Translations under genes and position numbers: made by a program
In this document: positions 570-46,093 of the stretch, piece by piece
Position numbering within the stretch: the first letter of the stretch is position 1
Layout: every line of letters begins with the position of its first letter
The notes under the pieces: model-generated
Database searches by the model: none
What the model was told of the DNA's origin: nothing
The model's input: the letters and a program-made list of their open reading frames with translations, nothing else
Source of the DNA: Rebecca billardiae RCC1528
Taxonomy: Eukaryota > Protista > Haptophyta
DNA length: 64,000 bases
Direction: 5' to 3'
Assembly: GCA_965240325.2 (NCBI GenBank)
Contig: OZ251232.1
Coordinates: 992,001-1,056,000 of the forward strand

Positions 570-2339
570 CTAGATGCGGAGGGTCCCGCCGTCGCGGCCA
601 CTGCCTTCCCAGGCCTGTTTGATGACGGCATTCTGAGCAGCGCTCAGCTTGTTGCCCCTGTGTGCACAGTGGAGGCACGCCGAGGGGAGGGGAAGCGCGG
701 AGAGGCGAGCGCCGCGCTCGCGCGAGGTGGGGTGGGCAGTGTCAGCCCACGCCGCTGCGCACCACACGCCGCGCCGTGCACCGCACCGCACCGCACCGCT
801 GCGCGCGCGCCGCCACACGCCGACTGCCGAGGGGCGGCGCGCGCGCCCCGCGGCGAGTGCGCCGGGCGCTGCCGCAGCCTCGCGCGACGGCGCTGCTGCG
901 GCGCCGTGCGCGGGTGCTCGCACGTGCGCGCGATGCGCACGGCGCGCGAGCCCCCCCCCCCCACCCCCCCTTCCGCTCGCGCCGCGCGCCGCCTCCCTCG
1001 CCGCGCCGTGCATGCGCGTACCCCAGGTGGAGCACCTGCAGCTTGGTGTTGGTGCGGAGCGCCTCCGCCAGCGCTGTGCCGGAGACGTCCGTCAGCTGGT
1101 TGTAGCTGTGTGCACAGCGGAGGCACGCCGAGGGGAGGGGAAGCGCGGAGAGGCGAGCGCCGCGGTCGCGCGGGGTGGGGTAGGCAGTGTCAGCCCACGT
1201 CGCACCGCACCACGCACCGCCCACCGCACCGCACCGCACCGCTGCGCACGCGCCGCCACACGCCGAGGGGCGGCGCGCGCGCCCCGCGGCGAGTGCGCCG
1301 GGCGCTGCCGCAGCTTCGCGCGACGGCGCTGCTGCGGCGCCGTGCGCGGGTGCTCGCACGTGCGCGCGATGCGCACGATGCGCGAGCCCCCCCCCACCGC
1401 CCCTTCCGCCCGCGCCGCGCGCCGCCTCCCTCGCCGCGCCGTGCGTGCGCGTACCCCAGGCCGAGCCACTGCAGCTTGGTGTTGGAGCGGAGCGCCTCCG
1501 CCAGCGCTGTGCCGGAGACGTCCGTCAGCGTGTTGTCCCTGTGTGCACAGCGGAGGCACGCCGAGGGGAGGGGAAGCGCCAAGAGGCGAGCGCAGCGGAC
1601 GCGCAGGGTGGAGTGGGCAGTGTCAGCCCACGCCGCTGCGCAGCACGCGCCGCGCACCGCACCGCACCGCACCGCACCGCACGCGCCGCCACACGCCGAG
1701 GGGCGGCGCGCGCGCCCCGCGGCGAGTGCGCCGGGCGCTGCCGCAGCCTCGTGCGACAGCGCTGCTGCGGCGCCGTGCGCGGGTGCTCGCACGTGCGCGC
1801 GATGCGCACGGCGCGCGAGCCCCCCCCCCCACCACCCCTTCCGCCCGCGCCGCGCGCCGAACCCCTCGCCGCCCCGTGCGTGCGCGTACCTCAGGTAGAG
1901 CTTCTGCAGCTTGGTGTTGGTGTGGAGCGCCTCCCCCAGCGCAGAGATGTCCGTCAGCTGGTTGCCGCTGTGTGCACAGCGGAGGCACGCCGAGGGGAGG
2001 GGAAACGGAGAGAGGCGAGCGCGGTGGTTGCACGCGGTGGAATGGGTGGTGTGAGTCCACGCCGCTGCGCACCACGCACCGCGCACCGCACCGCACCGTC
2101 CAGCGCCATGCTGAGCGCGCGCTGCCGCACCGGCCGCGTGCGCCGCCCGCCGTGGGGTGACGCGCGATGTGGGGCGCGCGCCGGGCGCTGCCGTAGCCTC
2201 GCGCGACGGCGCTGCTGCGGCGCCGTGCGCGGGTGCACGCGCGGTTGCACGCGCTGCACACGGCGCGCGGCCCGTCCTTCCCCCACTCCACCGCACGCGC
2301 CGCCCGCCGCCCCCCTCGCCCCACCGTGCGTGCGCGTAC
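570..2339 (-). repeat. Tandem exon+intron LRR cassette array of gene A (~430-nt unit)
   Basis: Three internal LRR exons (78, 84 and 84 nt) and a cap exon, separated by four highly similar introns. Confidence 0.92.
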
Positions 2340-4297
2340 CTCAGGTGGAGCGTCTGCAGGCGGCAGCTGTCCGCCCGCAGCGCCTGCGACAGCAGCCGCA
2401 CGCACTCGCCGTCCACGCCCGTCCCGTCGAGATCGAGCTTCGTCAGCTTGGCACTGTGCGCGGCGAGGTGCGCGATCGCCTGCGCGTGCGCCGCCACCGC
2501 CGTCTTCTTCTCCCACTCCGCCTCCTCCAGCCCCATCAGCGCATCTGCTGAGCCCACGCCCACAACTCGTGCGAGCGCCTCGAGCTCCTCCGCAGAGGCA
2601 CGGACTGGAGGCGACGCCGCGCGCGGCTGCTCCTCAGCGGCGCGGACGGGTGGTGGCGCCGCCGCGCGCGGCTCTGCGGCGTTCAGCGTCTCGACGAGCT
2701 CGGTGGCACTGGGTCTGAGCACGTATTCCGTTCGCACGCATCGCTCCTTCAGGCGGCGGAGTGCCCTTGGCGTGCCGGCTGGCAATCCAACCTTGGCCGG
2801 TGCGTTCGGCTGCTGCTGCGTGAGCAGCACCTCGACCAGCACGCCAAAGCTGAAGATGTCGGCCTTCTCGTTCGCGCGGCCAGCCATCGCCTCTGGCGCG
2901 GCATATCCTGGCGTTCCCCCTGCCTGCGACACGAACGATCGCGACATGGTGCGCGCCAGCCCCACATCTGCGAGCTTGGCCAGGCTGTAGTCCTCGTTGA
3001 GGAGCACGTTAGCCGGCTTGACGTCGTAGTGCACCACGGGCGGCTCGAGCGTGTGCAGGTAGTGCAGCGCGTACGCCACGTGCAGCGCGATGCGCTGCCC
3101 GCCCGCCGCCCAGGCCACGCGCGTCGGCTCAATCGCGAGCGCGTCGCTCAGGCTACCGCCGCCCATGCGTTCGGTGATAATCATCATATTCTCCGGCTCG
3201 TCGCACGCGCCGTACAAGACCACGATGTGCGCGTGCCGCAGCTGGTGCAGCATCCCCACCTCGCGCTCAAACTCGCGGCGCGCTTCGGACCCCGCGGCGT
3301 TCAGCCGCTTCACTGCGACGGGCTGCGCGATGCGCAGCCGCGCCGCGTACACGCGCCCAAAGCCGCCGCTGCCGAGCAGCACCTCGCCGCCATCCGCGCC
3401 GCGCTCGATCTCGACCTCGGCCGGGTGCACGTACCACTGCTGACGCGGCGCTGGCGCGGGCAGGCTGTTCACGCCGGCACCATGATGCTGCGCAGCGCCG
3501 GCAGCGCCGCGCTCGGCGAGGCGGTGGTAGCGCGCACACGCGTCCGCGTCCTCTCGCAAGTAGATCTCGCCAGGCCGGTGCATCACGTCGACGACGTGCG
3601 CGCTGCCGTCGACGTGCACCGCGTTCCACGCGTGCGCTCCAGCGGACACCCTCCCCGCGAAGTCGCCGCGCACCAGCGCGCACTCGATGCCCTCCGCGTC
3701 GCACAGCACCTTGAAGAGCAGCGCGCGGTGCCGGCACACGCCTAGCGAGATGTCACCGAGCGGCACGAGCATCGAGCCCCTCTCCTGCACGAGGGCGTTG
3801 ATCTCTTGGTTGGACTGCTCGACAAGATCGTCCGTCAAGCCCCCGAGCCGCTCGGACACGTGCGCGCCCAGCACCTTGATGCGATCGCGCATGTCCGTGA
3901 TGGGCTGCAGCCGATAGCGAGCTTCCTCGATGCAGTCGCGCAGGGACGCGTCGATGCGTGTGTCGACCACGAGCACCTCGCGGCCGCCGGGCGCGCCAGC
4001 GGGACGGCGAGCAAGATCAGCTGGTGCGGGTAGCGCAGCATCACGGGCCATCCGGCCGGCGTCGACGAAGCCGTCGCCCACGCGCGTGTCGAAGTCGAGC
4101 TTGTGCTCGTTGAAGTACCGCTCGGCGCTGGGCGCAAGGGGCAGCACGAGCACACGGTCGAGCCCGACCTCGCCGATCGCGCTGCCTGGAGCAAGCACGA
4201 GTCGGTCATCGCCGATGCACGCGCTCACGCGCGCACGGGCACCGCTGCCGACGATCACCACTTCCTTCCCGACGAGGCTCTCAGGGGACATCATCAC
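570..4297 (-). CDS. LRR-cassette gene A: EDR1/CTR1-like (transglutaminase-fold) domain + Ser/Thr kinase + RI-like LRRs; exons complement(570..657,1022..1105,1455..1538,1890..1967,2340..4297)
   Basis: EDR1-type motifs GVCRHRALLFKVLCD/HAWN/VVDVM; kinase motifs LGSGGFGRVY, VAVK, HYDVKPANVLL, ADVG, GTPGYAAPE. GT(ACGC)...CACAG phase-2 introns of 349-372 nt. Splicing gives in-frame LxxLxLxxNxL repeats ending KQAWEGSGRDGGTLRI*. Confidence 0.88.
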
Positions 4298-4530
4298 AGT
4301 TCGCGACTCTAGAGGTAACTACTTACTACCGACGAAGCTCTCGAGAGTACGGTAGTAGTGGTGGAACTTAGAGTAGTATCAGACCTGCTTTGCGTCATTG
4401 TTTCGCCCCATCAGGGAATCAACCTGGAGCCTCGAACCCCAAGTTGGCCGGCGCCGCCACGACGCCCGCAAAGTGGCTGAAGTGGCGTGCGGCCTCGCCT
4501 CGGGTCCGCGCTGGCGAAGGCGGAGGCTTT

Positions 4531-6768: not shown

Positions 6769-7269
6769 TGTCAAAAGCCCAAGGCAGCCATTGGCGCCAT
6801 TCCCCAGCTCGAGGTTTCAATCTCAAGGCGCTGAGCAATTCTAAGCGCCACCATGCTGAGGCTTCATTCCAATTCAAAACCTTATCATCGACCTCAACTG
6901 TCGGTTTTATTCACGTCCAGTGCACCAATTCATTCATCATCATTCATCGTGCATTTCATAATGGCCAACAAGCGTCGCGGAACAATCCAGGAATCAAAGC
7001 TCCTGAGATGTTCTCAAGCCTTCGCAGGGCAATGCACTATCAGATCATTCCGAGAACGTGCCTTCGCAATCAGAAGCCGAGAAGCATCTCCAAACTTTCT
7101 AATCACGAAAGTTCTGAGATAAGTCCTTCTTGAGAACCCTACAAAGGTTTTTCTCAGCGATCTGGAGCCACACCAGCAACAAAACCGAACTGATCAGCAA
7201 GCAGCAGGGAGACCCCTGCGCCACCATCGCCAAAGAGCGAACCTCCGCCAGCGCACGAAGTGCCAATCA
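6769..7269 (+). repeat. 5' LTR
   Basis: TGTCAAAAG...GCCAATCA; no differences seen by eye against 13978-14478. Confidence 0.96.
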
Positions 7270-13970: not shown

Positions 13971-13977
13971 GGGGGCG

Positions 13978-14478
13978 TGTCAAAAGCCCAAGGCAGCCAT
14001 TGGCGCCATTCCCCAGCTCGAGGTTTCAATCTCAAGGCGCTGAGCAATTCTAAGCGCCACCATGCTGAGGCTTCATTCCAATTCAAAACCTTATCATCGA
14101 CCTCAACTGTCGGTTTTATTCACGTCCAGTGCACCAATTCATTCATCATCATTCATCGTGCATTTCATAATGGCCAACAAGCGTCGCGGAACAATCCAGG
14201 AATCAAAGCTCCTGAGATGTTCTCAAGCCTTCGCAGGGCAATGCACTATCAGATCATTCCGAGAACGTGCCTTCGCAATCAGAAGCCGAGAAGCATCTCC
14301 AAACTTTCTAATCACGAAAGTTCTGAGATAAGTCCTTCTTGAGAACCCTACAAAGGTTTTTCTCAGCGATCTGGAGCCACACCAGCAACAAAACCGAACT
14401 GATCAGCAAGCAGCAGGGAGACCCCTGCGCCACCATCGCCAAAGAGCGAACCTCCGCCAGCGCACGAAGTGCCAATCA
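13978..14478 (+). repeat. 3' LTR
   Basis: Direct repeat of 6769-7269, followed by ATATA. Confidence 0.96.
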
Positions 14479-14835
14479 ATATATAACGATATATATATTT
14501 ATTTATTTATTTATATTCTGATAACTAGTAGTCGTCGTCCGATCCGATACTATCGTATCTGAAATAACGGGCACGGCTGCGCTGTGTCGAGCGTCGGCAC
14601 GACTGGGCAGCGGTCCGCTGCTGACTGCTTGGGCCCGACCGCGGCATCCGGAAGCGGATGGCGCCGCGTGCACAGGCTGGGGCTCGACGTGGAGGCTGCT
14701 GGCGGCGCAGTCGGCGCCGCCGGGCGCGGGCGCGCGCGGCCGACGGGCGACGGCTGCGCGCGCGCCAATACTAATATGCCCGACACGCGCCATCTTCGAG
14801 GCCTCTCTAGATGCCGAGGCCCTGGCAGCGGCCTC

Positions 14836-17800
14836 TCAACTCAAGGCCTGTTGGATGGTGGCTTTCTGAGCATCGCTCAGCTGGTTGCCCCTGTGTGCCG
14901 AGCGGGGGCACGCAGAGGGACGTGTGCGCGCGGAGAGGCGAGCGCGGCGGTCGTATGGGGTGGGCGGATTGGGTGGTGTCAGCCAACGCCGTTGCGCAGC
15001 ACGCGTCGCGTACCGCACCGCACCGCCACGCTGCCCGCACGCATGCGGCGCACGCGCCGCCGCACCGGCCACGTGCACCGCTCGCCATCGGCCGCGCGCG
15101 GATGCGATAGCGGCGCGAGCACCCACAGTAAACAATTCGATTTTAGCCGTCACCGTAACCTGTCCGCACTTCCGCCCAGTGGGGATGCGCTGGAATTTTT
15201 TTGATGCCCCGTTCGCGGCACTTCGCGCCGCCACAGTGGGGAAAGATCGGGCCGAAGCCGTTTGAGCATGGTCGTTCGCGCGCACGCCCATTCGAATCGA
15301 TGGCGCGCTCCGAGCGGCGGGCGTGCGCGCATGTGTGCCGCGAGGGGGGCTGCGAGGCGTCGGTCGGCCTGCCAAGGCGGTTCCCCGGGGCGGCGTCACC
15401 CTCGCCCGCCCCTCCTCGCCCACCCTCGCTCCACGGGCGGCCACACGTGACCTGTTAAGATGACTTCACGGGAGCCGCGCGGCACGCGCGCGGAGAGGCG
15501 AGGAAGTGGTGTTTCGCGGAAAAACGTTCTATAGCATTGTGCTCAACCCATGTGGGCACCCGCTCCACAAGTTTGTACGCCGCCAAACCGCACACAGCGG
15601 CCTGAGCAGCTCCCAGACTGACTTTCGCTCTTGAAGCCTGTTTTTGGGCCAGATCTTGGTGTGGATGTAGCGCGGCGAGGAGGCGCCGGGCGCGCGCCCG
15701 AGCTGCGTGCTGGCACTCGCCATGACCCATAGGCATCGTCCGTCGCGAACGACCCGGCTCGCCTCGACCTCTCCGACCCGCCGGGCAGCCACGACCGAGC
15801 GCGCAGCCAACGGTGTCCAAACAGAGGCTTCTCAGACCGCGTGGGATGGGCATAGGCGCGAGAGAGGGCGCCCAGCGCGCTCTTGAGATGCACAGGAGCA
15901 CGCACTGATGCGTATGGAACCATCCCATCACGATCGCCCCGACCTGGCGCGCCCTATCTGGCCCGTCAGGCTGCCCGCGCCGCCGCCGCCGCGCCACGCC
16001 GCCGCCACAGGCGCCGCCGCATCGCGGGCACGTGGGTAAGTCTGTATTCAACAAATACAGAATTTCCGGTGCGGCCCTCTTTTGGGCGGCAAGGTCGATC
16101 TGGTCGACACCTGCCGCGCGGCATGGGCCACGGCGCGGCGAGGTGGCGGCTGGCGCACTGCGGCGCGGGCGGGATGGCTCGAGGACACCACCGCCCCGCC
16201 TCCCACGCCGCGCCGAGCGCGTGCGCCGTGCTCTCGTCGCGTACCGAATTTCCTGCGGCGAGCGACGCCACACAGCGCGACCATGCCATCGCGCGACGAG
16301 GTGCGTTCAGCTCAGCGATTTGTCGTATTTGTTGAATACATGCGGGTACGAATCGGACGCACGACGCCCTCGACGCACACGTCGAGAGCCACGCGCGCGG
16401 CGTGGACTGGCACGCGACGCGGAGATGGCGGGCGCGGTGCCGCGGGCGCGCGACTGGTCTAGAACAGCACAATGAAGCGTGGGACGGCGCCGCGCGCGTG
16501 GGCTCGCTGCCGTCTCCTCGCAGTCGAAAATATCTGTGCACCAGTTCTGCCTGGGGTTGGGCCGGCCTCGCACGCGGCACGCGGGCACTGTTGCGGGGAG
16601 GAGTGTGATATGGCAGGCTGTGGCGAGGTGGATGGCCGTGTAGGAGTATGCTGGGAAGGGCCGTTCCCGCGCTCGCGCGGTGCCTCGCGCACGCCTCGTC
16701 GAGGACGAGCGTGTTTGAATGGCTCCCGGGAGGCCTGAGGCATTCGCTTGTTGACGGCAGCTCGCAACAGGTGCACACGACGAAGGTGACGACCAGGCAC
16801 TCCGGCGAGGGCGGCTGTGCTGGCAGCAGACCGTGCATTTGGAGTAAGATGCGCCATCTTACGCGCCGCTTCGCCTCGCTGCATCGCCGCACTGAGCAGC
16901 AGGGCCCCACGCTCACGAATGGCTCACCACGAGCTACGTGACCGGCCAGCCGCGTGCAACCCGGCGAGGCAGAGAGGGGCGGAGGGATGGGGAGGCTGGG
17001 TGGGGTGTTGCAGTCCCGTGCCCTGGGCACTCGCCAGGCGCCTGCGCGACCACCGTAGCGTCTTCTGTGCGCTCGTGCGGCCCGCGCGATAAATTCCCCG
17101 AAAATCGGCTCGCATCGGACAGGTTACGGTGACGATAATCCCGTTTTTGTTCACTGTGCCATGCGCGTCCGCAGCCTCGCGCGACGGCGCTGCTGACACG
17201 GTGCGCTACCCTGCCTCCCCCTCACTCCACCGCACGCGCCGCGCGCCCCCCGCCTCGCCACGCCGTGCCTGCGCGTACTTCAGGTGGAGCGTATGCAGCT
17301 TGGTGTTGGTGCGGAGCGCCTCCGCCAGCGCCTTGCCGGAAACGTCCGTCAGCTGGTTGTGACTGTGTGCACCGCGGGGGCACGCCGAGGGGAGGAGAAG
17401 TGCGGAGAAGCGAGCGCGGTGGTCACATGGGGTGGGGCGGGTGGTGCCAGCCCACGCCGCTGCACATCAAGCGCCACGCACCGCACCGCACCGCCCACCG
17501 CACCGCCACGCTGCGGCTGCGCACGCACCGCAGCACCGGACGCGCACACCGCTCGCCATCGGCCGCGCGCGGATGCGATAGCGGCACAAGCGCCAGGCGC
17601 GACCGCAGCCTTGCGTGACGGCGCTGCAAACACGGTGCACGACCCTGCCTCCCCCCGACTCCACTGCACGCGCCGCGCGCCCCCCGCCCCCCCCTCGCCG
17701 CGCCGTGCGTGCGCGTACTCCAGGTCGAGCAGCTTCAGCTTGGTGTTGGTGCGGAGGGCCTCCGCCAGCGCTGTGCCGGAGATGTCCGTCAGCTTGCTGT

Positions 17801-20800
17801 CCCTGTGTGCACAGCAGAGGCACGCCGAGACAAGGGGAAGCACGGAGAGGCGAGTGCGGCGGCCGCGCAGTGTGGGATGGGCGGTATCCGCCACGCAGCT
17901 GCTACCACACACTGCGCACCGCATCGCACCGCACCGCTGGGCGCGCGCCCTGTGGCTGTGCGCACGCGCCGCCGGACCGGCTGTGCGCGTCGCCCGCCGT
18001 GGGGTGGCGCGCGTGGCGTGGCGCGCGCACCGGGCGCGGCCGCAACCTAGCGCGACGGCCGCGCCGCACGCGGTTGCCCGCGCTGCACACGGGGTGCAAC
18101 CCTGCCTCCCCCCACTCCACTGCACGCGCCGCGCGCCTCCCGCCTCGCCGCGCCGTGCGTGCGCGTACACCAGCCTGAGACACTGCAGCGAGGCGTTGGT
18201 GTGGAGCGCCTCCGCCAGCGCTGTGCCGGAGATGTCCGTCAGCTGGTTGCGGCTGTGTGCACAGCAGAGGCACGCCGAGGGACGGGCGCGCGCGGAGAGG
18301 CGAGCGGCCACGGGGCAGGATGGGTGGTGTCAGCCAATGCCGCTGCATACCACGCACTGCCCACCGCACCGCACCGCACCGCTGTGCGCACGCCGCCGCG
18401 CTGGCCACGCCACGCCGCCCGCTGTGGGGCGGGCGCAAGCGGCGCGGCGCACGCGCCGGGCGCGGCCGCAGCCTCGCACAACGGCGTTGCTGCGGCGCCG
18501 TGCGCGGGTGCGTGCGCTGCACACGGCGCATGAACCTAACCTCTCTCCCCGCTCCGCCACATGCACAGCGCGCCCCTCGCCTCGCCGCGCCGTGCGTGCG
18601 CGCACCTCAGCTGGAGCTGCTCCAACTTGGTGTTGGTGCGAAGCGCCTCTGCCAGCGCCTTGCCGGAGACGTCCGTCAGCTGGTTGCGGCTGTGTGCACA
18701 GCAGAGGCACGCCGAGAGAAGGGCGCGCGTGGAGAGGCGCGCACAGAGGTCGCAAGCGGTGGGATGGGCGGTATCAGCCCACGCCGCTGCGCACCACACA
18801 CCGCAACCGCACCACACCGCTGCGCGCGCGTCCTGTGCGCACGCGCCGCCGGACCGGCTGCGCGCGCCGCCCGCCGTGGGGCGGTGCGCGTGGCGTGGCG
18901 CGCGCGCCGGGCGCGGCCGCAGCCCCGCGCGACGGCGGCGCCGCACGCGGTTGCCCACGGTGCACACGGCGCATGCACCTCCCTCCCCCAACTCCACTGC
19001 ACGCGCCGCGCGCCCCCCGCCTTGCCACGCCGTGCGTGCGCGTACTACAGGTCGAGCTCCCGCAGCGAGGTGTTGGTGCGGAGCGCCTCCGCCAGCGCTG
19101 TGCCGGAGACGTCCGTCAGCTGGTTGTGCCTGTGTGCACAGCGGGGGCACGCCGAGGGAAGGGGAACCGCGGAGAGGCCAGCGCGGCGGGCGCCCGGGGT
19201 GGGACGGGCGGTGTCAGCCCACGCCGCTGCGCACCACGCACTACCCACAACACCGCACCGCACCGCCACGCCACGCGAGCGCCCTGTGCACGCGCGCCGC
19301 AGCACCGACCGCGCGCGCCGCCCGCCGCGAGCCGGCGCGCGCGCCGCGGCGCGGCCGCAGCCTGGCGCGATGGCCGCGCCGTGCGAGGGTGCCCACGCTG
19401 CCCACAGCGCGCGACCCAGCCACTCCCCACTCGATCGCACGCGCAGCGCAATGCCTGCCCCGCCGCGCCGTGCTTGCGCGTACTCCAGGTCGAGCTTCTC
19501 CAGCTTGGTGTTGGTGCTGAGCGCCTTCGCCAGCACCTTGACGGAGACGTCCGTCAGCGGGTTGTCCCTGTGTGCTCAGCGGGGGCACGGCGAGGGACGG
19601 GCGCGCACGGAGAGGCGAGCGCGGCGGACGCGCGGCGTGGGGTGGGTGGTGTCAGCCCACGCTGCTGCGAACCACGCACCACGCACCGCACCGCACCGCC
19701 ACACTGCGCCGTGCGTGCGCGTATTCCAGGTAGAGCCACTTCAGCGAGGTGTTGGTGCGGAGCGCCTCCCCCAGCGCTGTGCCGGAGACGTCCGTCAGCT
19801 TGTTGCGCCTGTGTGCACAGCAGAGGCACGACGAGAAAAGGGCACGCGCGGAGAGGCGAGCGCGGCGGACGCACGAAGCAGGATGGGTGGTGTCAGTCCG
19901 CACCGCGCAGCGCACCGCACCGCCACGCCACGCGCACGCCCTGTGCGCACGCGCCGCAGCACCGGCCGCGCACGCCGCCAGCTGTGGGGCGGTGCAAGCG
20001 CCGCGGCGCGGCCGCAGCGTGGTGCGACGGCGGCGCCGCGCGCGGGTGCTCACACTGCTCACTGCGTGCAACCCTGCCTTCCCCCACTCCACCGCACGCG
20101 CCTCGCAACCCCCGCCTCGCTGCGCCGTGCGTGCGCGCACCTGAGGTAGAGCTTCTGCAGCGAGGTGTTGGTGCAGAGCGCCTCCGCCAGCGCTGTGCCG
20201 GAGACGTCCGTCAGCTGGTTGCCGCTGTGTGCACAGCGGAGGCACGCCGAGGGAAGGGGAAGCGGGGAGAGGCGAGCGCGGCGGCCGCGCAGGGTGGAAA
20301 GGGCGGTGTCAGCCCACGCCGCTGCGCACCACGTACTGCCCACCGCACCGCACCGCACCGGCACACTTTGCACGGGCCGCTGCACCGGCTACGCGCGCCG
20401 CCCGCCACGGGGCGGAGCGCGCGGTGAGGCGTGCGCCGGGCGCGGCCGCAGCCTTGTCTGATGGCGCCGCTGCGGAGCGGCGCGCGGATGCCCGCGTTGC
20501 ACACGGCGCACGGCCCTCCCTCCCTGTCCCGCCGCACGCGCCACGCGCCGCACGCCTCGCCGCGCCGTGCGTGCGCGTACGTCAGGTGGAGCTCCTTCAG
20601 GCAGCAGCTGTCCGCCCGCAGCGCCTGCGACACCAGCCGCACGCACTCGTTGTCCACGTCGGTACGGTCGAGATCGAGATTCGTCAGCTTGGCATTGTTG
20701 TGCGCGACGAGATGCGCAATCGCCTGAGCGTGCGCCGCCACCGCCGTCTTCTTCTCCCACTTCGCCTCCTCCAGCCCCATCAGCGCCTCCGCTGAGCCCA

Positions 20801-21962
20801 CACCCGCAGCGAGCGCGAGCGCCTCTAGCTGCTCCGCAGCGGCACGGACGGGCGGCGGCGCCGTGCGCGGCTCGGCTGCGGCGGTGGCTGCGGCGGTCTG
20901 TGGCGGGACCTCAGAGTCGACCCGTTTCGACGATGGTGCCGGGGCCTGCCCTGCCGCGGGCTCAGGCCCAGAGCCCTCGCGAGTGCCGCCGCCCTTGGCT
21001 GGCTGCTGCTGCGCCTGCTTGGCTTTGAGCAGCCGGGGCGGCACGCCAGAGAGGCTCAGCTCCTTCACCTCATCCAAGAAGCGGCGGCAGCGCACGCCCG
21101 AGCTGAGGCCGTACCGCTTCAGATCGTCCACCTCGAGGTAGCGCAGATCCTTCCCGACGAGCTTATCACCTCGCGCGCCCGGCACAAGCTCGTCGAATTG
21201 GAGCGAGGCGAGCAGGGCGCACACGCCCTCGCAGTCCACCGTGTCGAGCTTCACGTTGGCTGCCAGCGGCTCGGACGGCGCAGCGGTGGCGTGTGACGAA
21301 GGCGAAGCGGCCAGCTCGATGCTCGCGCCCACCTTGCGCGCTACCAGCTCGAGCAGGTGGTCCTTGTCCTCGGCCGGCAGCTCGAAGAGGGACGTGTCCT
21401 GAGGCGGGTAGCAGTTGAGTGCGCCAAACCTGTCCAGGACTTCGTACCGTTTCACCTTGTAGTCGTCGATGTCCTTGCCTGGGAGGAGCTCGCGGAGCGG
21501 CCACTGCTCGGCCTTTGGCGGTGGCAGCCCCTTCTCTGTGCGCACCGGAATGATCGCGCAGCCGCGTTTGATCGCCGCGCTGATCTCCTCGAGGCACGGC
21601 ATCGAGCGGTAGAGCGCGCGCGAGAGGAGGACGATCAGCACCTTGGCCTTGGCATCCTCACTATCGATGCGCAGGAGGAAGTGCTTCCAGTTCGTGCCGG
21701 GCGGTACGTGGAGGCCCGTGACGCACGCCAGCCCCACCGCGTCCAACGCGAGCACGAGCTCAGCCGCATCGTACACGCCCGGGCCTGTGCCCGGCTCGTC
21801 AACGTCCTTGCGGTGCCCGGTCGCGTACGAGACGACGATCTCGGGGTAGAAGTTCTTGAACTCCTCGGGCATGCGTTTGCCCAGATGCACCTGCAGCTTG
21901 TTCACGACCGCCTTCGTCGTCTTCTCCTCGCGCTCAATCCCCTTCCAGCGTGGTGTCGTCAT
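14836..21962 (-). CDS. LRR-cassette gene B: TIR + SAM + RI-like LRRs; exons complement(14836..14890,17279..17362,17719..17802,18169..18252,18606..18689,19046..19129,19484..19567,19725..19808,20141..20224,20581..21962)
   Basis: TIR motifs EIVVSY and AKVLIVLLSRALYRSMPCLEEISAAIKRGCAIIPV; SAM-like VCALLASLQF...LVGKDLRYLEVDDLKRYGLSSGVRCRRFLDEV. Same N-cap as genes A and C, then eight 84-nt phase-2 LRR exons. One donor reads AT instead of GT. Start placed at MTTPRW. Confidence 0.82.
15124..17158. mobile_element. Non-autonomous EnSpm/CACTA(CMC)-like DNA transposon in the last intron of gene B
   Basis: Imperfect 43-bp TIRs CACAGT(A/G)AACAA...CGTCACCGTAACCTGTCCG and a 2-bp CC duplication. Removing the element restores a 351-nt intron matching the neighbouring empty intron near 17581-17610. 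No transposase ORF is seen. Confidence 0.85.
17279..20580 (-). repeat. Tandem exon+intron LRR cassette array of gene B
   Basis: Eight 84-nt exons with related introns of 332-366 nt, plus one of 157 nt. More diverged than arrays A and C. Confidence 0.92.
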
Positions 21963-22842
21963 TAAGCCCGCCCTGCCACTTCGAGCGCTGCTGGAGTGCT
22001 GGGTGCCTGGCCCCGGCCGGCCGGGGGATATGACTCCACAGGAATCAGAATGGGCCCTATGGGGGTACTGTGAACGGCATACAGGGGGGTCCAGATGGTG
22101 GCGGGTACTTCGATGGTGGCTGGCCAGGTAGTGCGGCACGTCCGTGCCTCTGGACGGGCATTGAGCCGTGGCGAGGTCGCCAAATCGCGCGGCGTGGTCC
22201 CAGAGAAGGCTGCTGCTATCACTGACCAGCTTGCTAGCCATGCCGGTCGTTGATCACCCCGCCGTTGACAGGCGCGCACACGCCACGCGTAATCGCATGG
22301 CAGCCGTGTCGGACGGCGGTCGCACGACTACCGCGTAGCCAACATTGATCGTCAGACTCACGACTTGTGGGGTCAGGCAGAACATTGATAGGTCTGCACC
22401 CTCGCCTGGCATGCCCCAGAGGTCAACACAGCCATCAGAAGGGTGATCCTGCCCACTACTTGCCCATCCTTCCCATGCGCAGTCTCGCGCGCGCCGGTCA
22501 CACGATGACGTGGACGTGGACGTGAGAGTGGTCGAAAAGTCGGAAGGGAAGCTGTCACTCACGCACGCGCGCTCGTACGGCGACGCCGACCGGCGAGTGC
22601 AACGCCCCCCTGTCCCGGACGTTGCACTCGCGCCTTGGATCGCGGTGGGACGGCCATTCACGCCCGCCATGGCTTCCCTTCAAAACTCCCCAACTTCATC
22701 TGGACCCCCCTGTATTCAGCATACATTACCATCCCGAGGCCAATCGATGACGATTATACGAGCGAAAGGATGAATACTGTAGGCGCGCGCTCAAAATAGC
22801 GTACAGTACCCGCCTACCCGGCCACGGAACTGAAACCGTTTG

Positions 22843-24015: not shown

Positions 24016-24100
24016 CCATGCGCTGAGTGGCCGCCTCGGCCTGTCACTCTGCCGCAAGCCCGACGCGGGTCGCGGCACGTGATTGCGGGAGATCGGCACG

Positions 24101-32228: not shown

Positions 32229-32268
<40 letters not shown>

Positions 32269-37757: not shown

Positions 37758-37969
37758 CGCGCCGCTGCGAGCCGCAATCAGCGCCGGCGAGCGAGCGTCC
37801 GGCGCGGCCAGCGGCGGCGCGCAGTCTCGCGGTGCCTGCTGCTGCAAGGAGCCCAGGCCTGGCTGCGAAGAGCGATCCGGGCGCCCGGACTGTGGGCCGC
37901 TGCCAAACTGCCAGCCATCCTGCGCCGCCCCGGCCGGCGAGCGCAAGGCGGAGGGCACGGCGCGTGCGC

Positions 37970-39047
37970 GCGGGGCGGGCTGCTGCGCGTGGTGCTCGTG
38001 CTGGGCGCGGCGGGCGGCGGCGGCGGCGAGGGCGTGCCGCCGCCCGCCGCGACGGCGGCCGAAGCGGTGCGCGCCGGCGCGCCCCTCGGCCGCTCCCTGG
38101 TCTTCGTCAAGACCAAGAAGTGCGGCGGCACGACGGCGGCCGGCGTCTTCCGCCGCATCGGCGCGCACCACAACGTGAGCTTCTTCTCGCCGCAGGTGCG
38201 CCGCGCGGGGCAGGCGGAGCTGCGCGCGTGGGCGGACGCGCAGCGCGCGCGGCTCGGCGCGTCCGCGCCCCTCGGCTGGGCCGAGGAGGCCGAGCTGCCC
38301 GCGTGGCTGCCCGAGCTGCTGCCGGGTGCGTTCCGAGCGACCATCCTGCGCTCGCCGATCGAGCGCGCGTTCGCCGCGTTCTACCACTTCGCGATGAACC
38401 ACGGCAAGCCGAACACGACGGAGGCGAAGCGCAGGTGGGTCTCCGCCGAGGCCTCCTCGATGTTCGACTACGTCCGCGGCGCCGCCACCACCGTTCGCGC
38501 CGCGCTCGCGCAGTACGACCTTGTGCTACTCGTCGAGCGGCTGCCCGAGTCGCTCGTCGCGCTGCAGATGAGCCTGCCGGGCGTGCGGCTGTGCGACGTG
38601 CTGTACATGCCGGCGAAGACGAAGCACTTCTCCGCGCGCCGCCGCCCGCACATCCCGCTCGCGTGGGAGGAGCCGCAGCTCGTCGCGGACGTGCGCGCCG
38701 CGTTCGGCGCCGGGCGCGACGCCGCGCTGTACGACGCGGCGAGCGCCGCGCTGGACGCGGCGGTGGCGAGGCTGCGGCCGCACGGCTTCGACGCGCGCGT
38801 CGCCGCGCTGCGCGCGATGCTGCGCGGCGCGCAGCCGGCGTGCGCCGACCCCGCCTCGCGCAAGGCGCTGCAGTGGGCGGTGTTCGGCCGGCAGGCCTTC
38901 CCAAAGTCGCGCTGCTACCACCGCGACACCGGGTGCAACTACAACTGCCTCGACGCGTGGGCGGTCAAGCACCGCGCGTGCGGCAGCGACGCCGTGGCAG
39001 CGCGCGACGAGTTACGCGGGGATGCGACGGCCACCGCGCCGCGGTGA
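37970..39047 (+). CDS. Sulfotransferase (Gal-3-O-sulfotransferase-like); start codon not identified
   Basis: PAPS-binding motifs LVFVKTKKCGGTT and TILRSPIER..FY, plus YDLVLLVERLPESL and DAALYD. Confidence 0.75.
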
Positions 39048-41662: not shown

Positions 41663-44600
41663 ATGGCCCGACTCGCGCCGACAGCACCGTGCATCTGCCC
41701 GCTCACGCTCGAGCCGCCGGCGGAGCCGATAACCACACCGTGCGGGCACACGTTCGAGCGTGCTGCGATAGAAGCGCACCGCAGGAGCGTTCGCTCCCGT
41801 GATATCGCTGCGACGTGCCCCATATGCCGACAGCCTCTCGCGAACGAGGAGACCGAGTGCTTCGGCCTTGCTGTCAACGTGGCGATGCGAGATGCCGTTC
41901 GCGAGTGGGAGGCGGCGCGCGACCTCGCGCAGGACCCCTGGTCGTCAGCGCACACGCGCACGTTTGAGGTCGCCGACCTCTCCATCGCGCAAGGCCGGCC
42001 GCTCGGCCGCGGGGCATTTGGCCGTGTCCGCCGGGCTTCCCTTCAGCCTGAGGGGCTCGAGGTCGCCGTGAAGCAGGTGCCGACCGACGACGACGCGACA
42101 GCGCGCACTGCCAAGCGCGAGCTCGACGCGCTCAGTCGGCTGCGCCATCCGCACATCGTGCAGCTTCTCGGTGTGGTCAACCATGCCGACGATGGCGAGG
42201 TCTGGCTGGTGCTCGAGCTCGCCGAGCACGGATCCCTGCGATCGCTCCTGGGGAGCGGAGCCGCTCGCACGGCCGCGTTCGGCTCTGACGTTGCGCTGCC
42301 GGGCGTGACGCGCACCTTCTTCCGAATTGCGGGCGAGGTCATGTGCGCGCTTGCATTCCTGCACAGGCACGGCGTGACGCACGGTGACATCAAGCCGGAG
42401 AACGTGCTCATCTATGCTGGCGGCGCGGCCAAGCTCGCCGATTTTGGCCTCGCGTCGATATCTGAGACGATGCGCGAGAAAGGGCTGCGCCTGTCGTCGT
42501 CGAGCGCGAGCGTTGGCCCGCGCGGCACGGCTGGCTACATGGCACCAGAGGTTGCGCGCGGCGCGGCGAAGCCTTCTCCGCCATCCGATGTGTTCAGCGC
42601 CAGCATCGTGCTCGCGTACATGCTTTCCGGCGAGACGCTCTTCAGCAACGTCGCCAACCACGATCCGTTCGTGCTCACGAACGCGATCATCCAAGGCGCG
42701 CGGCCGAGGCTCAGCGCGCCTGTGCACCACCACGAGCAGGCCCTGCACGAGCTGCTCGCGGGCATGTGGTCGGACTCTGCCGCACTGCGACCGCAGGCTG
42801 CTTCCGCGAGGATCGAACTGCGCTCGATGATGGAGCCGGGGGGTGACGAGCGGCCAGCCAGCGGGGCGCGCACGGCGGCTGCAGAAGCAGAGCGCGCTGC
42901 TGCGGAAGAGGCGAGGCGCACGGCGGGTGCAGAGACGGCGCCGCGTGCGGCGCCGCCCGTCCGCGCCGCTGCGGAGCAGCCGCACGCAGCGGCGCCGCCC
43001 GTCCGCGCTGCAGCGGAGCAGCCGCGCGCGGCGGCGGCGCCGCCACCCGTCCGCGCCGCTGCGGAGCAGCCGCGCGCGGCGGGGGCGGCGCCACCCGTCC
43101 GCGCCGCTGCGGAGCAGCCGCGCGCGGCGGCGGCGCCGCCACCCGTCCGCGCCGCTGCGGAGCAGCCGCGCGCGGCGCCGCCTCCAGTCCGCGCCTCTGC
43201 GGAGCAGCTCGAGGCGCTTGCACGCGCTGTGGGCGTGGGCTCAGCAGAGGCGCTGATGGGGCTGGAGAAGGCGGAGTGGGAGAGGAAGACGGCGGTGGCG
43301 GCGCACGCGCAGGCGATCGCGCACCTCGCCGCGCACAGTGCCAAGCTGACCAAGCTCCGTCTCGACGGGACGGGCGTGGACGGCGAGTGCGTGCGGCTGC
43401 TGTCGCAGGCACTGCAGGCGGACAGCTGCCGGCTGCAGTGGCTCTACCTGAGGTACGCGCACGCACGGTGGGGCGAGCGGGGCGGCGGGCGGCGCGTGCG
43501 GTGTAGTGGGGGAAGGACGGGCCGCGCGTCGTGTGCAGCGCGTGCACCCGCGCGTGCACCCGCGCACGGCGCCGCAGCAGCGCCGTCGCGCGAGGCTGCG
43601 GCAGCGCCCGGCGCGCGCCCCACATCGCGCGTCACCCCACGGCGGGCGGCGCGCGCGGCCAGTGCGGCAGCGCGCGCTCAGCATGGCGGTGGACGGTGCG
43701 GTGCGGTGCGGTGCGCGTGGTGCGCAGCGGCGTGGGCTGACACTGCCCACCCCACCCCGCGCGACCGCGGCGCTCGCCTCTCCGCGCTTCCCCTCCCCTC
43801 GGCGTGCCTCCGCTGTGCACACAGCTCCAACCAGCTGACGGACGTCTCCGGCACAGCGCTGGCGGAGGCGCTCCGCACCAACACCAAGCTGCAGTGGCTC
43901 TGGCTGCAGTACGCGCACGCACGGCGCGGCGAGGGGGGCGGCGCGCGGCGCGGGCGGAAGGGGGGTGGGGGGGGCTCGCGCGCCGTGCGCATCGCGCGCA
44001 CGTGCGAGCACCCGCGCACGGCGCCGCAGCAGCGCCGTCGCGCGAGGCTGCGGCAGCGCCCGGCGCACTCGCCGCGCGGCGCGCGCGCCGCCCCTTGGCG
44101 TGTGGCGGCGCGTGCGCAGCGGTGCGGAGCGGTGCGGTGCGCGGCGCGTGGTGCGCAGCGGCGTGGGCTGACACTGCCTACCCCACCCCGCGCGACCACC
44201 GCGCTCGCCCCTCCGCGCTTCCCCTCCCCTCGGCGTGCCTCCGCTGTGCACACAGCTGGAACCAGCTGACGGACGTCTCCGGCACAGCGCTGGCGGAGGC
44301 GCTCCGCACCAACACCAAGCTGCAGGGGCTCTGGCTGGGGTACGCGCACGGATGGCGCGGCGAGGAGGGCGGCGCGCGGCGCGGGCGGAAGGGGGGGGTG
44401 GGGGTGGGGGGGGGGGCTCGCGCGCCGTGCGCATCGCGCGCACGTGCGAGCACCCGCGCACGGCGCCGCAGCAGCGCCGCCGCGCGAGGCTGCGGCAGCG
44501 CCCGGCGCACTCGCCGCGGGGCGCGCGCGCCGCCCCTCGGCGTGTGGCGGCGCGTGCGGTGCGGTGCGGTGCGGTGCGGTGCGCGGCGCGTGGTGCGCAG

Positions 44601-46093
44601 CGGCGTGGGCTGACACCACCCACCCCACCCCGTGCGACCGCGGCGCTCGCCTCTCCGCGCTTCCCCTCCCCTCGGCGTGCCTCCGCTGTGCACACAGGTA
44701 CAACCAGCTGACGGACGTCTCCGGCACAGCGCTGGCGGAGGCGCTCCGCACCAACACCAAGCTGCAGACGCTCTGGCTGAGGTACGCGCACGCACGGCAC
44801 GGCGAGGGGGTCGGCGCGCGGCGCGGGCGGAAGGGGGGGGTGGGACGGGGGCTCGCGCGCCGTGCGCATCGCGCGCACGTGCGAGCACCCGCGCACGGCG
44901 CCGCAGCAGCGCCGTCGCGCGAGGCTGCGGCAGCGCCCGGCGCACTCGCCGCTTGGCGCGCGCGCCGCCCCTCGGCGTGTGGCGGCGCGTGCGGTGCGGT
45001 GCGGTGCGGTGCGGTGCGCGGCGCGTGGTGCGCAGCGGCGTGGGCTGACACCACCCACCCCACCCCGTGCGACCGCGGCGCTCGCCTCTCCGCGCTTCCC
45101 CTCCCCTCGGCGTGCCTCCGCTGTGCACACAGCCTCAACCGGCTGACGGACGTCTCCGGCACAGCGCTGGCGGAGGCGCTCCGCACCAACACCAAGCTGC
45201 AGGTGCTCTGGCTGCAGTACGCGCACGCACGGCGCGGCGAGGGGGGCGGCGCGCGGCGCGGGCGGAAGGGGAGGTGGGAGGGGGGCTCGCGCGCCGTGCG
45301 CATCGCGCGCACGTGCGAGCACCCGCGCACGGCGCCGCAGCAGCGCCGTCGCGCGAGGCTGCGGCAGCGCCCGGCGCACTCGCCGCGGGGCGCGCGCGCC
45401 GCCACTCAACGTGTGGCGGCGCGTGCGCAGCGGTGCGGTGCGGTGCGCGGCGCGGCGCGTGGTGCGCAGCGGCGTGGGCTGACACTGCCCACCCCACCCC
45501 GTGCGACCACCGCGCTCGCCTCTCCGCGCTTCCCCTCCCCTCGGCGTGCCTCCGCTGTGCACACAGCGGCAACAAGCTGACGGACGTCTCCGGCACAGCG
45601 CTGGCGGAGGCGCTCCGCACCAACACCAAGCTGCAGCAGCTCGACCTGAGGTACGCGCACGCACGGCGCGGCGAGGGGGGCGGCGCGCGGCGCGGGCGGA
45701 AGGGGGGGGGGGGGGGGGGGGGGGGGGCTCGCGCGCCGTGCGCATCGCGCGCACGTGCGAGCACCCGCGCACGGCGCCGCAGCAGCGCCGTCGCGCGAGG
45801 CTGCGGCAGCGCGCGGCGCACTCGCCGCGGGGCGCGCGCGCCGCCCCTCGGCGTGTGGCGGCGCGTGCGGTGCGGTGCGGTGCGGTGCGGTGGGCGGTGG
45901 GCGGTGCGCAGCGGCGTGGGCTGACTCTGCCCACTCCACCCCGCGCGTCCGCGGCGCTTGCCTCTTCGCGCTGCCCCTCCCCTCGGCGTGCCTCCACTGT
46001 GCACACAGCGGCAACCAGCTGAGCGATGCTCAGAAGGCCGCCATCAAACAGGCCTGGACAGGCAGTGGCCGCAGCGGGGACCTCCACACCTAG
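41663..46093 (+). CDS. LRR-cassette gene C: U-box + Ser/Thr kinase + RI-like LRRs; exons join(41663..43452,43825..43908,44256..44339,44698..44781,45133..45216,45567..45650,46009..46093)
   Basis: U-box CPLTLE...PCGHTFERAAI...TCPICRQPL...N.AMR; kinase LGRGAFGRV, VAVK, HGDIKPEN, DFG, GTAGYMAPE. Five exact 84-nt phase-2 exons with GTACGC...CACAG introns of 347-372 nt. Confidence 0.9.
42940..43205 (+). repeat. Coding minisatellite (PPVRAAAEQPRAA(AA)), about 5-6 copies, in the linker of gene C
   Basis: 42-48-nt units seen directly. About two units occur in gene A (~2590-2675) and one in gene B (~20830-20875). Confidence 0.9.
43453..46093 (+). repeat. Tandem exon+intron LRR cassette array of gene C
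   Basis: ~435-nt unit; a 60-nt exon core is identical in all five internal exons. Confidence 0.94.

What the first reader, a model, noticed from the sequence alone, without database searches (positions are those of the whole stretch)
570..46093. Modular LRR exon-cassette receptor family: three different signalling N-termini on one shuffle-ready LRR module
Seen: genes A (EDR1-kinase), B (TIR-SAM) and C (U-box-kinase) have different N-termini. They share a linker, an N-cap (LEALA..GVGSA.ALMGLE.A.WE.KTAVAAHAQAIAHL...), arrays of 3, 8 and 5 single-LRR phase-2 exons, a C-cap exon (GN.LS.AQ...I.QA) and 3' flank. Every internal exon has a length divisible by three, so any of them can be skipped, duplicated or swapped in frame. 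Known: TIR, U-box and Pelle/IRAK-like kinases are innate-immune signalling domains; one-repeat-per-exon shuffling has been proposed for brown algal LRR-ROCO genes; lamprey VLRs are assembled from LRR cassettes. Inference: a combinatorial intracellular receptor system in a microalga that diversifies both recognition and signalling output.
Basis: partly seen in the sequence, partly recalled or inferred. Interest (0 to 1): 0.95.

Follow-up and report, generated by a model that had tools for sequence, protein, structure and literature searches.

The report
Three genes share hypervariable LRR module
Three genes of a very GC-rich, probably pavlovophyte, alga join the same leucine-rich-repeat sensor tail to three different signalling heads. 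The tail has one repeat per exon and varies almost only at five ligand-facing residues, a design already known from brown algae and fungi, and nothing shows antibody-like shuffling.

Summary
Genes A (570-4297, minus strand), B (14836-22241, minus) and C (41663-46093, plus) carry EDR1-peptidase-like+kinase, TIR(+weak SAM) and U-box+kinase heads. All three share a Pro/Ala linker, a helical N-cap, 3, 8 and 5 single-repeat phase-2 exons (15 of 84 nt, one of 78), a C-cap exon and about 145-170 nt of 3' flank.

Corrections:
- B's second LRR exon has an AT donor and is probably dead.
- B's C-cap lies 2.4 kb downstream, beyond a transposon insertion.
- SAM is below the Pfam threshold.
- The head-to-module junction lies inside exon 1, not at an intron.

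New results:
- Variation is packed into five codons, the x positions of LxxLxLxxNxL. In the A/C units 13 of 15 such sites vary, against 1 of 69 framework sites and 53 of 347 intron sites.
- The A and C modules are 91-96% identical, introns included, while their kinases are 35% identical.
- Expressed relatives carry the same N-cap module.

My reading is a germline, fast-evolving family of cytosolic LRR sensor-effector proteins. It is shaped by tandem exon+intron duplication, module transfer or conversion between loci, and diversifying selection. Combinatorial splicing or somatic shuffling is untested, because no RNA data were available. Earlier notes of this scan report the same cassette design at other loci of this genome.

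The parts
2340..4297 (-). Gene A exon 1 (first ATG at 4294). EDR1/CTR1-peptidase-like domain about 3563-4126, kinase about 2804-3379 (HYD and DVG motifs, a non-RD kinase), shared linker and N-cap from 2677 to 2340.
1890..1967 (-). Gene A LRR exon A1: 78 nt, a 26-residue repeat, phase 2-2.
1455..1538 (-). Gene A LRR exon A2, 84 nt.
1022..1105 (-). Gene A LRR exon A3, 84 nt.
426..657 (-). Gene A C-cap exon (657-570, stop codon ends at 570) and the 3' flank shared with C (569-426).
20581..22241 (-). Gene B exon 1 (ORF ATG at 22241; the real start is probably Met94 at 21962). TIR_2 match about 21522-21767, weak SAM_2 match about 21057-21236, shared linker and N-cap from 20883 to 20581.
17279..20224 (-). 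Gene B LRR array of eight 84-nt phase-2 exons: 20224-20141, 19808-19725 (B2, donor AT, probably dead), 19567-19484, 19129-19046, 18689-18606, 18252-18169, 17802-17719, 17362-17279.
14891..17278 (-). Gene B last intron, 2388 nt, holding a 2035-bp insertion (15124-17158) with 43-bp imperfect terminal inverted repeats that start CACAGT.
14663..14890 (-). Gene B C-cap exon (14890-14836, stop TGA) and the shared 3' flank down to 14663.
41663..43452 (+). Gene C exon 1. U-box about 41693-41914, kinase about 41990-42805 (HGD and DFG motifs, non-RD), 48-nt linker repeat in 5.7 copies at 42947-43208, N-cap and first LRR at 43190-43452.
43825..45650 (+). Gene C LRR array of five 84-nt phase-2 exons: 43825-43908, 44256-44339, 44698-44781, 45133-45216, 45567-45650. 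The exon+intron units are about 435-440 bp and 93-97% identical.
46009..46236 (+). Gene C C-cap exon (46009-46093, stop codon ends at 46093) and the 3' flank shared with A, to 46236.

Best explanation
A, B and C are three germline genes for soluble, probably cytosolic, sensor-effector proteins. I saw no signal-peptide-like or membrane-spanning hydrophobic stretch by eye; no predictor was run.

Each gene joins a different N-terminal enzyme or signalling head to the same C-terminal module. The heads are EDR1-peptidase-like+kinase, TIR with a possible SAM, and U-box+kinase. The module is a Pro/Ala linker, a helical N-cap with cryptic first repeats, ribonuclease-inhibitor/NLR-type 28-residue LRRs and a C-cap.

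Shown:
- The arrays grew by tandem duplication of exon+intron units of about 435 bp.
- The whole module of A and C (about 2.2 kb, introns and about 145 nt of 3' flank included) is 91-96% identical, although their kinases are only 35% identical. The module was therefore copied or converted between the two loci recently, with its 5' edge in the coding linker repeat.
- Within each repeat, five codons (25, 27, 1, 2 and 4, the x positions of LxxLxLxxNxL) are saturated with non-synonymous differences. Framework codons change more slowly than the introns.
- These five positions are the outward-facing residues of the beta-strand and the loop after it.

Inferred:
- The concave face binds varied ligands and is kept diverse by selection.
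- Ligand binding controls the head (kinase activity, ubiquitin ligation, or TIR NAD+ cleavage or oligomerisation through SAM).
- The family serves recognition of biotic non-self, such as viruses, bacteria or conspecifics.
- Diversity arises in the germline over evolutionary time, not by a programmed somatic or splicing generator.
For: - Gene models and phases.
- Head domains.
- Module boundaries and identities. Kinases of A and C are 35% identical.
- Intron tree: the Ai1/Ci1 pair has 100/99 support. Ai2-4 and Ci2-6 form one clade (100/99) with the two genes intermixed. B is separate and older.
- Hypervariability, units A2, A3 and C1-5: variable columns are 13/15 hypervariable, 1/69 framework and 53/347 intron (Fisher 7e-9 for hypervariable against intron, 6e-4 for framework against intron). 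Pairwise differences are 0.50, 0.019 and 0.057. Of the 21 extra codon types at hypervariable positions, 20 change the residue.
- B shows the same pattern: 0.48, 0.11 and 0.21.
- Invariant N3, L26 and L28 are interleaved with the hypervariable codons, so the selection acts on the protein and is not a regional mutation effect.
- Fold: the AlphaFold model of the homologous module of P0011 (pLDDT 89.8) has strands at positions 25-28 plus 1. Its best PDB matches are ribonuclease inhibitor and NLRP/NOD2 LRR domains.
- The spliced modules match LRR_6-type proteins.
- Expression of the architecture in relatives: P0011 sits on a contig with an uninterrupted 2.1-kb ORF, and P0012 is an MMETSP transcript.
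Against: - There are no RNA data for this organism. Splicing, expression and isoforms are unverified; the only run gave unspliced DNA-like contigs.
- The immune role is inferred only from domain types and the selection pattern.
- The TIR call sits exactly at the Pfam threshold, with no PDB, PADLOC or NCBIfam support. B's head has no detectable homologues.
- The star-like unit tree cannot separate one past module copy from continuing exchange between loci.
- The hypervariability test uses paralogous repeats within one genome, not population or orthologue data.
Confidence: 0.7

Rival explanations
1. This is a programmed combinatorial diversification system. The symmetric phase-2 cassettes would be skipped, duplicated or swapped by regulated alternative splicing or somatic recombination, giving many receptor isoforms per cell or clone.
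For: All 16 cassette exons are multiples of three and phase 2-2. Only two forward joins would create a stop codon. In brown-algal ROCO genes with the same phase-2 single-LRR exons, alternative splicing of LRR exons is reported (PMC11378527). Each ligand-face strand is split between two exons, so a new junction makes a new strand.
Against: There are no isoform or read data. The genes are complete germline ORFs with strong, uniform splice sites. The window holds no orphan cassettes outside the genes. The heads are joined to the module within an exon. The diversity seen is fully explained by germline substitution at five codons.
Confidence: 0.1
2. These are not immune receptors. The LRR module would be a substrate or partner adaptor for endogenous signalling, for example targeting of the kinase or the U-box ligase in the way LRR substrate receptors of ubiquitin ligases work. 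Its variable face would follow fast-evolving endogenous partners, such as mating or cell-cell recognition proteins.
For: RI-type LRRs are general protein-binding modules. The fold search also returns axonemal and cytoplasmic-lattice LRR proteins. No NOD/STAND domain is present. The U-box-kinase-LRR architecture is conserved in a relative.
Against: Saturated non-synonymous divergence at ligand-face codons, at about 9 times the intron rate, is typical of antagonistic co-evolution. The same module is joined to a TIR domain. Recent copy-number change and module transfer fit known receptor families (PMC1805685, PMC3341825).
Confidence: 0.15
3. The arrays are assembly artefacts or decaying pseudogenes: collapsed or expanded tandem repeats, or non-functional remnants.
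For: The tandem units are 93-97% identical and hard to assemble. B2 has a dead donor and Bi3 carries a deletion. A transposon sits in B's last intron.
Against: All three spliced frames are open from start to stop. Framework codons are under purifying selection relative to the introns. One public contig reproduces a B exon-intron junction without a mismatch (record 5). Relatives express the architecture.
Confidence: 0.05

Closest known systems
Brown-algal ROCO (LRR-ROC-COR) and LRR-kinase genes with one LRR per exon (Zambounis et al. 2012, PMC3341825; Teng et al. 2024, PMC11378527)
   Same: There is one repeat per exon. The exons are symmetric and, as here, phase 2. They duplicate and shuffle in tandem, dead exons occur, and positive selection acts on a few concave-face positions. 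They are proposed as candidate immune receptors.
   Different: The brown-algal exons are 72 nt and encode plant-type 24-residue LRRs placed N-terminal to a ROC-COR GTPase. Here the exons are 84 nt and encode RI/NLR-type 28-residue LRRs placed C-terminal to kinase, U-box or TIR heads. There is no ROC-COR. The organism is a haptophyte-like alga, not a stramenopile. The introns are homogenised together with the exons.
Podospora anserina NWD/HNWD family and fungal NLRs with highly internally conserved repeats (Paoletti et al. 2007, PMC1805685; Dyrka et al. 2014, PMC4986451)
   Same: Near-identical repeats carry 4-5 hypervariable interaction-surface positions. Repeat number varies. Repeat domains are similar or exchanged between paralogues that carry different N-terminal effector domains.
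   Different: The fungal repeats are WD, ANK or TPR, with no LRRs reported in that survey. They lie in one exon and follow a NACHT or NB-ARC domain. Here the repeats are LRRs, each on its own exon, and there is no NOD domain.
Vertebrate ribonuclease inhibitor and NLRP/NOD LRR domains
   Same: The LRR class and fold are the same: best PDB matches have TM 0.72-0.75 to RI, NLRP9 and NLRP7, with LRR_6-type sequence matches. A modular exon organisation of these LRRs is known; this rests on my own knowledge and was not checked here.
   Different: The vertebrate exons encode a 57-residue A+B repeat pair (own knowledge). NLRs have a NACHT domain. Ribonuclease inhibitor has no effector head.
SARM1 (ARM-SAM-SAM-TIR)
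   Same: B combines a TIR with a SAM-like segment, and its nearest ESM-Atlas feature clusters are SARM1/Ect4 families. A repeat domain could act as an autoinhibitory sensor.
   Different: The domain order is TIR-SAM-LRR. There is one weak SAM and an LRR in place of ARM. No sequence homologue was found.
Lamprey variable lymphocyte receptors
   Same: The binding surface is an LRR concave face diversified at few positions, and the repeats are cassette-like.
   Different: VLR germline genes are incomplete and are assembled somatically from flanking cassettes (own knowledge). Here the germline genes are complete and spliced conventionally, and no orphan cassettes were found.

Membership tests
RI/NLR-type LRR (Pfam LRR_6 class) | Repeats of 28-29 residues, LxxLxLxxNxL strand followed by a helix, forming a curved solenoid | tested here: met
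   The repeats are 28 residues, one of 26. LRR0 and the spliced modules match LRR_6-rich proteins, including NACHT-LRR proteins. The model of the homologous module matches RI and NLRP folds best. Single exons alone are too short for Pfam.
One-LRR-per-exon shuffling receptors (brown-algal ROCO type) | Each LRR on its own exon, with symmetric phase and a length that is a multiple of 3 | tested here: met
   16 of 16 exons are phase 2-2, of 84 or 78 nt.
One-LRR-per-exon shuffling receptors (brown-algal ROCO type) | ROC-COR GTPase next to the LRRs; 72-nt plant-type LRR exon | tested here: not met
   Pfam finds no Roc or COR domain. The exons are 84 nt and RI-type.
One-LRR-per-exon shuffling receptors (brown-algal ROCO type) | Diversifying selection on concave-face residues | tested here: met
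   Hypervariable columns 13/15 against intron columns 53/347, Fisher 7e-9. The positions map to the strand and the following loop.
One-LRR-per-exon shuffling receptors (brown-algal ROCO type) | Alternative splicing of LRR exons | not testable with these tools
   No RNA run was listed. The laid contigs were unspliced.
NLR / STAND receptors | Central NACHT or NB-ARC nucleotide-binding domain | tested here: not met
   Pfam finds none in the exon 1 of A, B or C.
Fungal-type highly-conserved-repeat receptors (NWD-like concerted evolution) | Internal repeat identity above 85%, with few hypervariable surface positions | tested here: met
   A/C units are 93-97% identical, introns included. The framework is 98-100% identical and five codons are hypervariable. 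B's units are older, at 75-86%.
Fungal-type highly-conserved-repeat receptors (NWD-like concerted evolution) | Repeat exchange between loci | tested here: inconclusive
   A and C units are intermixed in the tree, and identity between genes (94.4%) equals identity within genes (93.8-94.9%). A single module copy at about 6% divergence explains this as well.
TIR-domain proteins (gene B) | Significant match to a TIR profile | tested here: met
   TIR_2 scores E 3.3e-6 and 28.0 bits, equal to the gathering cut-off. ESM-Atlas neighbours are TIR families. There is no PDB, PADLOC or NCBIfam match.
TIR-domain proteins (gene B) | Catalytic glutamate of NAD+-cleaving TIRs | tested here: inconclusive
   By eye, a C-L-E-E-I segment sits where the consensus has the catalytic Glu after the beta-C strand (translation). 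No residue-level alignment to a solved TIR could be obtained, and the single-sequence AlphaFold model failed (pLDDT 34).
SARM1 family | ARM-SAM-SAM-TIR order with tandem SAM domains | tested here: not met
   The order is TIR, then one weak SAM_2 match (E 0.009, below cut-off), then LRR.
EDR1/CTR1-type kinases (gene A) | N-terminal EDR1/CTR1 peptidase-like domain followed by a kinase domain | tested here: met
   PF14381 scores 4e-28 at residues 58-245 and Pkinase 6e-39 at residues 307-498. Homologues at 50-55% identity occur in Pavlovales sp. CCMP2436 and in metagenomes. The C-terminal LRR module is an addition to this architecture.
Lamprey VLR-type somatic assembly | Incomplete germline gene flanked by donor cassettes that lack splice sites | tested here: not met
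   The germline ORFs are complete with canonical splice sites. All 16 core matches in the window lie inside the three genes.

The most novel reading that the evidence does not exclude
Pavlovophyte haptophytes may have a receptor repertoire without a NOD domain. One hypervariable RI-type LRR cassette module, with its own N-cap and C-cap, would be moved or homogenised among genes with many different effector heads. This window shows kinase, U-box-kinase and TIR-SAM heads. Relatives and earlier notes of this scan add membrane (XK-like), SAM and kinase-RBR heads. Exon skipping or unequal exchange of the phase-2 cassettes would add further variation in sensor length and in the junction residues. 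This would be an independent solution to the task done by NLRs in plants, animals and fungi, in a group whose antiviral recognition is unknown.
Probability: 0.3. Interest if true: 0.8.

Novelty: new variant of a known kind. Interest (0 to 1): 0.6.

Why it matters
Almost nothing is known about how marine microalgae recognise viruses and bacteria. In the haptophyte Gephyrocapsa huxleyi, the TIR genes linked to virus resistance carry no LRR or NBS domain (PMC12489294).

A family in which one fast-evolving LRR sensor is wired to kinase, ubiquitin-ligase and TIR outputs gives concrete candidate receptors to test. The five hypervariable positions per repeat are precisely mapped.

It also extends a design principle to a third eukaryotic lineage and to RI/NLR-type LRRs. 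That principle is near-identical repeats, few hypervariable surface positions, and repeat domains shared among different effector heads. The phase-2 single-repeat exons are the same as in brown algae.

The D. lutheri genome paper, the closest published genome description I read, does not mention LRR genes (PMC8379373).

Tried and rejected
1. RNA evidence. The first run search on gene C listed nothing. The second, on B exon 1, gave one sample of unknown kind. Its contigs were laid on 16900-22300 (5401 letters, within the operators' limit). They were short, mostly 90-95% alike and unspliced, with no joints.

2. N-cap search in the word-indexed protein database: no hit. B exon 1: no hit.

3. Metagenome contigs searched with the N-cap alignment and with the exon-core DNA pattern: nothing. 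The bacterial and archaeal genome collection was not used, because it does not apply to a eukaryote.

4. Single-sequence AlphaFold of the TIR-SAM region failed (pLDDT 34), so no fold search of B's head was possible.

5. PDB sequence search, PADLOC and NCBIfam gave no TIR or SAM support.

6. Pfam on single 27-residue exon peptides is uninformative, because the exon cuts the LRR_6 model.

7. Downstream of the Pavlovales CCMP2436 EDR1-kinase homologue there is no N-cap module, only an RI-type LRR ORF on the opposite strand.

8. I considered that the introns might be dispersed 'introner' elements and rejected it. Outside the three genes the window has only weak GC-rich low-complexity matches.

9. 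I considered that regional hypermutation at exon edges might explain the variable codons and rejected it. Invariant codons 3, 26 and 28 are interleaved with the hypervariable ones, and 20 of 21 variants change the residue.

Full report
**Organism and setting**

The window averages about 72% G+C. The best named homologues of gene A's head are from Pavlovales sp. CCMP2436, at 51-56% identity. The published Diacronema lutheri genome is 73.25% G+C (PMC8379373). The source is therefore probably a pavlovophyte haptophyte, but I could not identify it.

**Anatomy**

TRF finds three arrays with periods of 433-442 bp, at 644-2359, 17192-19699 and 43694-46022. A search with the exon core finds 16 copies: 3 in A (minus strand), 8 in B (minus) and 5 in C (plus), and none elsewhere in the window.

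With the uniform sites GTACGCG...GTGCACACAG, all three genes assemble into open frames:
- A is 763 residues in the frame opened at 4297. The first ATG is at 4294 and the stop codon ends at 570.
- B is 795 residues, with its stop at 14836.
- C is 826 residues in the frame opened at 41477. Its ATG is at 41663 and the stop codon ends at 46093.

Every intron is in phase 2. The LRR exons are 84 nt, except A1 at 78 nt.

Pfam gives these heads:
- A: EDR1/CTR1-peptidase-like domain plus kinase.
- B: TIR_2, exactly at the gathering score.
- C: U-box plus kinase.

SAM in B is below threshold. An ESM-Atlas feature search places the B head nearest to SARM1/Ect4-type SAM+TIR clusters, with scores of 0.93 and 0.92. 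This is a lead, not a proof.

Both kinases read HYD or HGD instead of HRD, so they are non-RD kinases. From my own knowledge, this trait is associated with pattern-recognition signalling. I did not test it here.

**Corrections to the observation**

- Exon B2 has an AT donor, and the next intron is cut down to 157 nt. It is probably a dead exon, like the 'inactivated exons' of Ectocarpus (PMC3341825).
- B's C-cap exon lies 2388 nt beyond B8. A 2035-bp element with 43-bp terminal inverted repeats sits in that intron.
- Joining B4 to B7 or to the C-cap would create TAG.
- A and B are neighbours separated by a copia element. C lies 19 kb from B, behind unrelated genes.

**The shared module and its edges**

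By blastn, homology between A and C starts at A 2677 / C 43116, inside a 48-nt coding repeat (APPPVRAAAEQPRAA). This repeat has 5.7 copies in C, 2 in A and 1 in B. From there the homology runs colinearly to 143 nt past the stop codons, at 91% over 2048 nt.

Identity of A to C, piece by piece:

| Piece | Identity |
|---|---|
| N-cap | 93.5% |
| Intron 1 | 93.3% |
| Internal introns | 94.4% |
| Last intron | 94.3% |
| First 150 nt of 3' flank | 96.5% |

Beyond that, homology ends. Upstream, the two kinases are only 35% identical as proteins. B shares the same module at 74-79% identity, from 20883 to 14663.

Two points follow:
- The module was copied or converted between A and C recently. N-cap dS is 0.087.
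- The junction lies within exon 1, so classical intron-mediated exon shuffling did not join heads and module.

**Age of the architectures**

An exhaustive HMMER search with the N-cap found only two proteins that cover it.

- P0011 has U-box, kinase, linker, N-cap, 26-residue LRRs and C-cap. It is 43% identical to C over the U-box and kinase (E 5e-84). It lies on a 2.8-kb contig with an uninterrupted ORF, which looks like a transcript.
- P0012 is an MMETSP transcript with a hydrophobic N-terminal part, N-cap, LRR and C-cap. Its N-terminus has only a weak XK-related feature lead.

So the C-type fusion is old and is expressed in a relative.

For A, a metagenome scaffold encodes an EDR1-kinase (50% identical) followed in the same orientation by intronless RI-type LRRs of another subtype. 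The CCMP2436 homologue shows no module downstream. B's head has no detectable homologue.

**Repeat dynamics**

The intron tree shows three things:
- Ai1 pairs with Ci1 (100/99 support).
- All internal introns of A and C form one clade (100/99) with the two genes intermixed.
- B's introns are separate and older, at 75-86% identity.

Identity between genes equals identity within genes. The data fit a burst of unit duplication around the time of the module copy, or continuing exchange. I cannot separate the two.

**Hypervariability**

I used a 28-codon register in which the split codon is number 1. Codons 1, 2, 4, 25 and 27 carry 5-9 different residues among the 16 repeats. Codons 3 (N, with one S), 5-7, 9, 13, 16, 17, 20, 23, 26 and 28 are invariant or nearly so.

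Among A2, A3 and C1-C5:

| Site class | Variable columns | Pairwise difference |
|---|---|---|
| Hypervariable | 13 of 15 | 0.50 |
| Framework | 1 of 69 | 0.019 (0 within C) |
| Intron | 53 of 347 | 0.057 |

Fisher's test gives 7e-9 for hypervariable against intron. Twenty of the 21 extra codon types at hypervariable positions change the residue.

Whether the units are young, or old but homogenised, these codons must be kept different by selection on the protein.

The AlphaFold model of the P0011 module (pLDDT 89.8, pTM 0.87) places the beta-strand at positions 25-28 plus 1. Positions 25, 27 and 1 are therefore the outward-facing strand residues, and 2 and 4 flank the conserved Asn. Its best structural matches are ribonuclease inhibitor and NLRP/NOD2 LRR domains.

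Each ligand-face strand is encoded across an exon junction.

**Interpretation**

This is a germline family of LRR sensor-effector fusions under diversifying selection. It is built by tandem exon+intron duplication and by module transfer between loci.

The closest known systems are:
- Brown-algal ROCO genes, with 72-nt phase-2 LRR exons and four selected concave-face sites (PMC3341825, PMC11378527).
- The fungal NWD/NLR repeat families, with concerted evolution within and between loci, four hypervariable positions, and combinatorial N-terminal domains (PMC1805685, PMC4986451).

It differs from both in several ways: the repeat class (RI/NLR-type LRR), the lack of any NOD or ROC domain, the heads, the lineage, and the co-homogenised introns.

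Nothing supports somatic or splicing-based combinatorics, and no RNA data could be obtained.

**Earlier notes of this scan**

Notes on other DNA of the same genome describe the same cassette design with five hypervariable codons. The heads they name are XK-like membrane, kinase-RBR and SAM-like, including ten 84-nt exons 285 kb away on the same piece of the genome. I did not verify them. If they are right, the family is genome-wide.

Noticed in passing
window 6769-14478: An intact Ty1/copia LTR retrotransposon lies between genes A and B. Its 501-bp LTRs are 100% identical (TG..CA), it has a 5-bp ATATA target duplication in a TA-rich stretch, and it carries a 2236-codon gag-pol ORF (RVT_2 5e-49). 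Its G+C is 56-61% against about 72% for the surroundings, so it looks very recently inserted.
   Followed up: partly
window 15124-17158: A 2035-bp insertion without a convincing ORF sits in the last intron of gene B. It is bounded by 43-bp imperfect terminal inverted repeats that begin CACAGT(A/G)AAC. It looks like a non-autonomous DNA transposon. No clear target-site duplication was seen.
   Followed up: partly
window 19724 (donor of exon B2) and 19568-19724: The donor of B's second LRR exon reads AT instead of GT, and the following intron is shortened to 157 nt. This is probably an inactivated cassette that would be skipped in frame.
   Followed up: partly
window 1890-1967 (exon A1); P0011, P0012: A1 is a 26-residue repeat (D-I-S-A-L-G-E-A-L). 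It has the same length and pattern as the repeats of the two relatives P0011 and P0012 (D-V-S-x-[LI]-G-x-A-L). All other repeats here are the 28-residue type. This could be an ancestral repeat type or a convergent 6-nt deletion.
   Followed up: no
window 43825-45216 (exons C1-C4): Hypervariable position 27 is Trp in four consecutive repeats of C, with further Trp at position 25 of C1 and position 2 of C2. This predicts a tryptophan ladder on the concave face.
   Followed up: no
window 2804-3379 and 41990-42805: Both kinases lack the Arg of the HRD motif (HYD in A, HGD in C). A also has DVG in place of DFG.
   Followed up: no
window 45702-45727 and equivalent places in the other A and C introns: Each intron of the A/C type holds a G-run of variable length, 26 G in C's last intron. 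It is a likely site of slippage and of assembly uncertainty.
   Followed up: no
L003:570-2827 (ENA metagenome scaffold): An EDR1-kinase gene 50% identical to A is followed, after a stop and a frame change, by intronless RI-type LRRs (N-Q-I-G-D-A-G-A type) in the same orientation. This may be an EDR1-kinase-LRR fusion with a short intron, in another organism.
   Followed up: partly
window 50921-58330 (+), with repeats at 55205-55856: A stop-free frame of 2470 codons has many IQ calmodulin-binding motifs (2e-18). It includes a 228-nt tandem repeat of 2.9 copies at 95% identity.
   Followed up: no
window 22843-24120 (-), 34462-37728 (-), 37551-39047 (+): Unrelated genes lie between B and C: a nucleotide-diphospho-sugar transferase, a PHD-finger protein and a galactose-3-O-sulfotransferase-like protein. 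The three LRR genes therefore do not form a tight cluster.
   Followed up: partly
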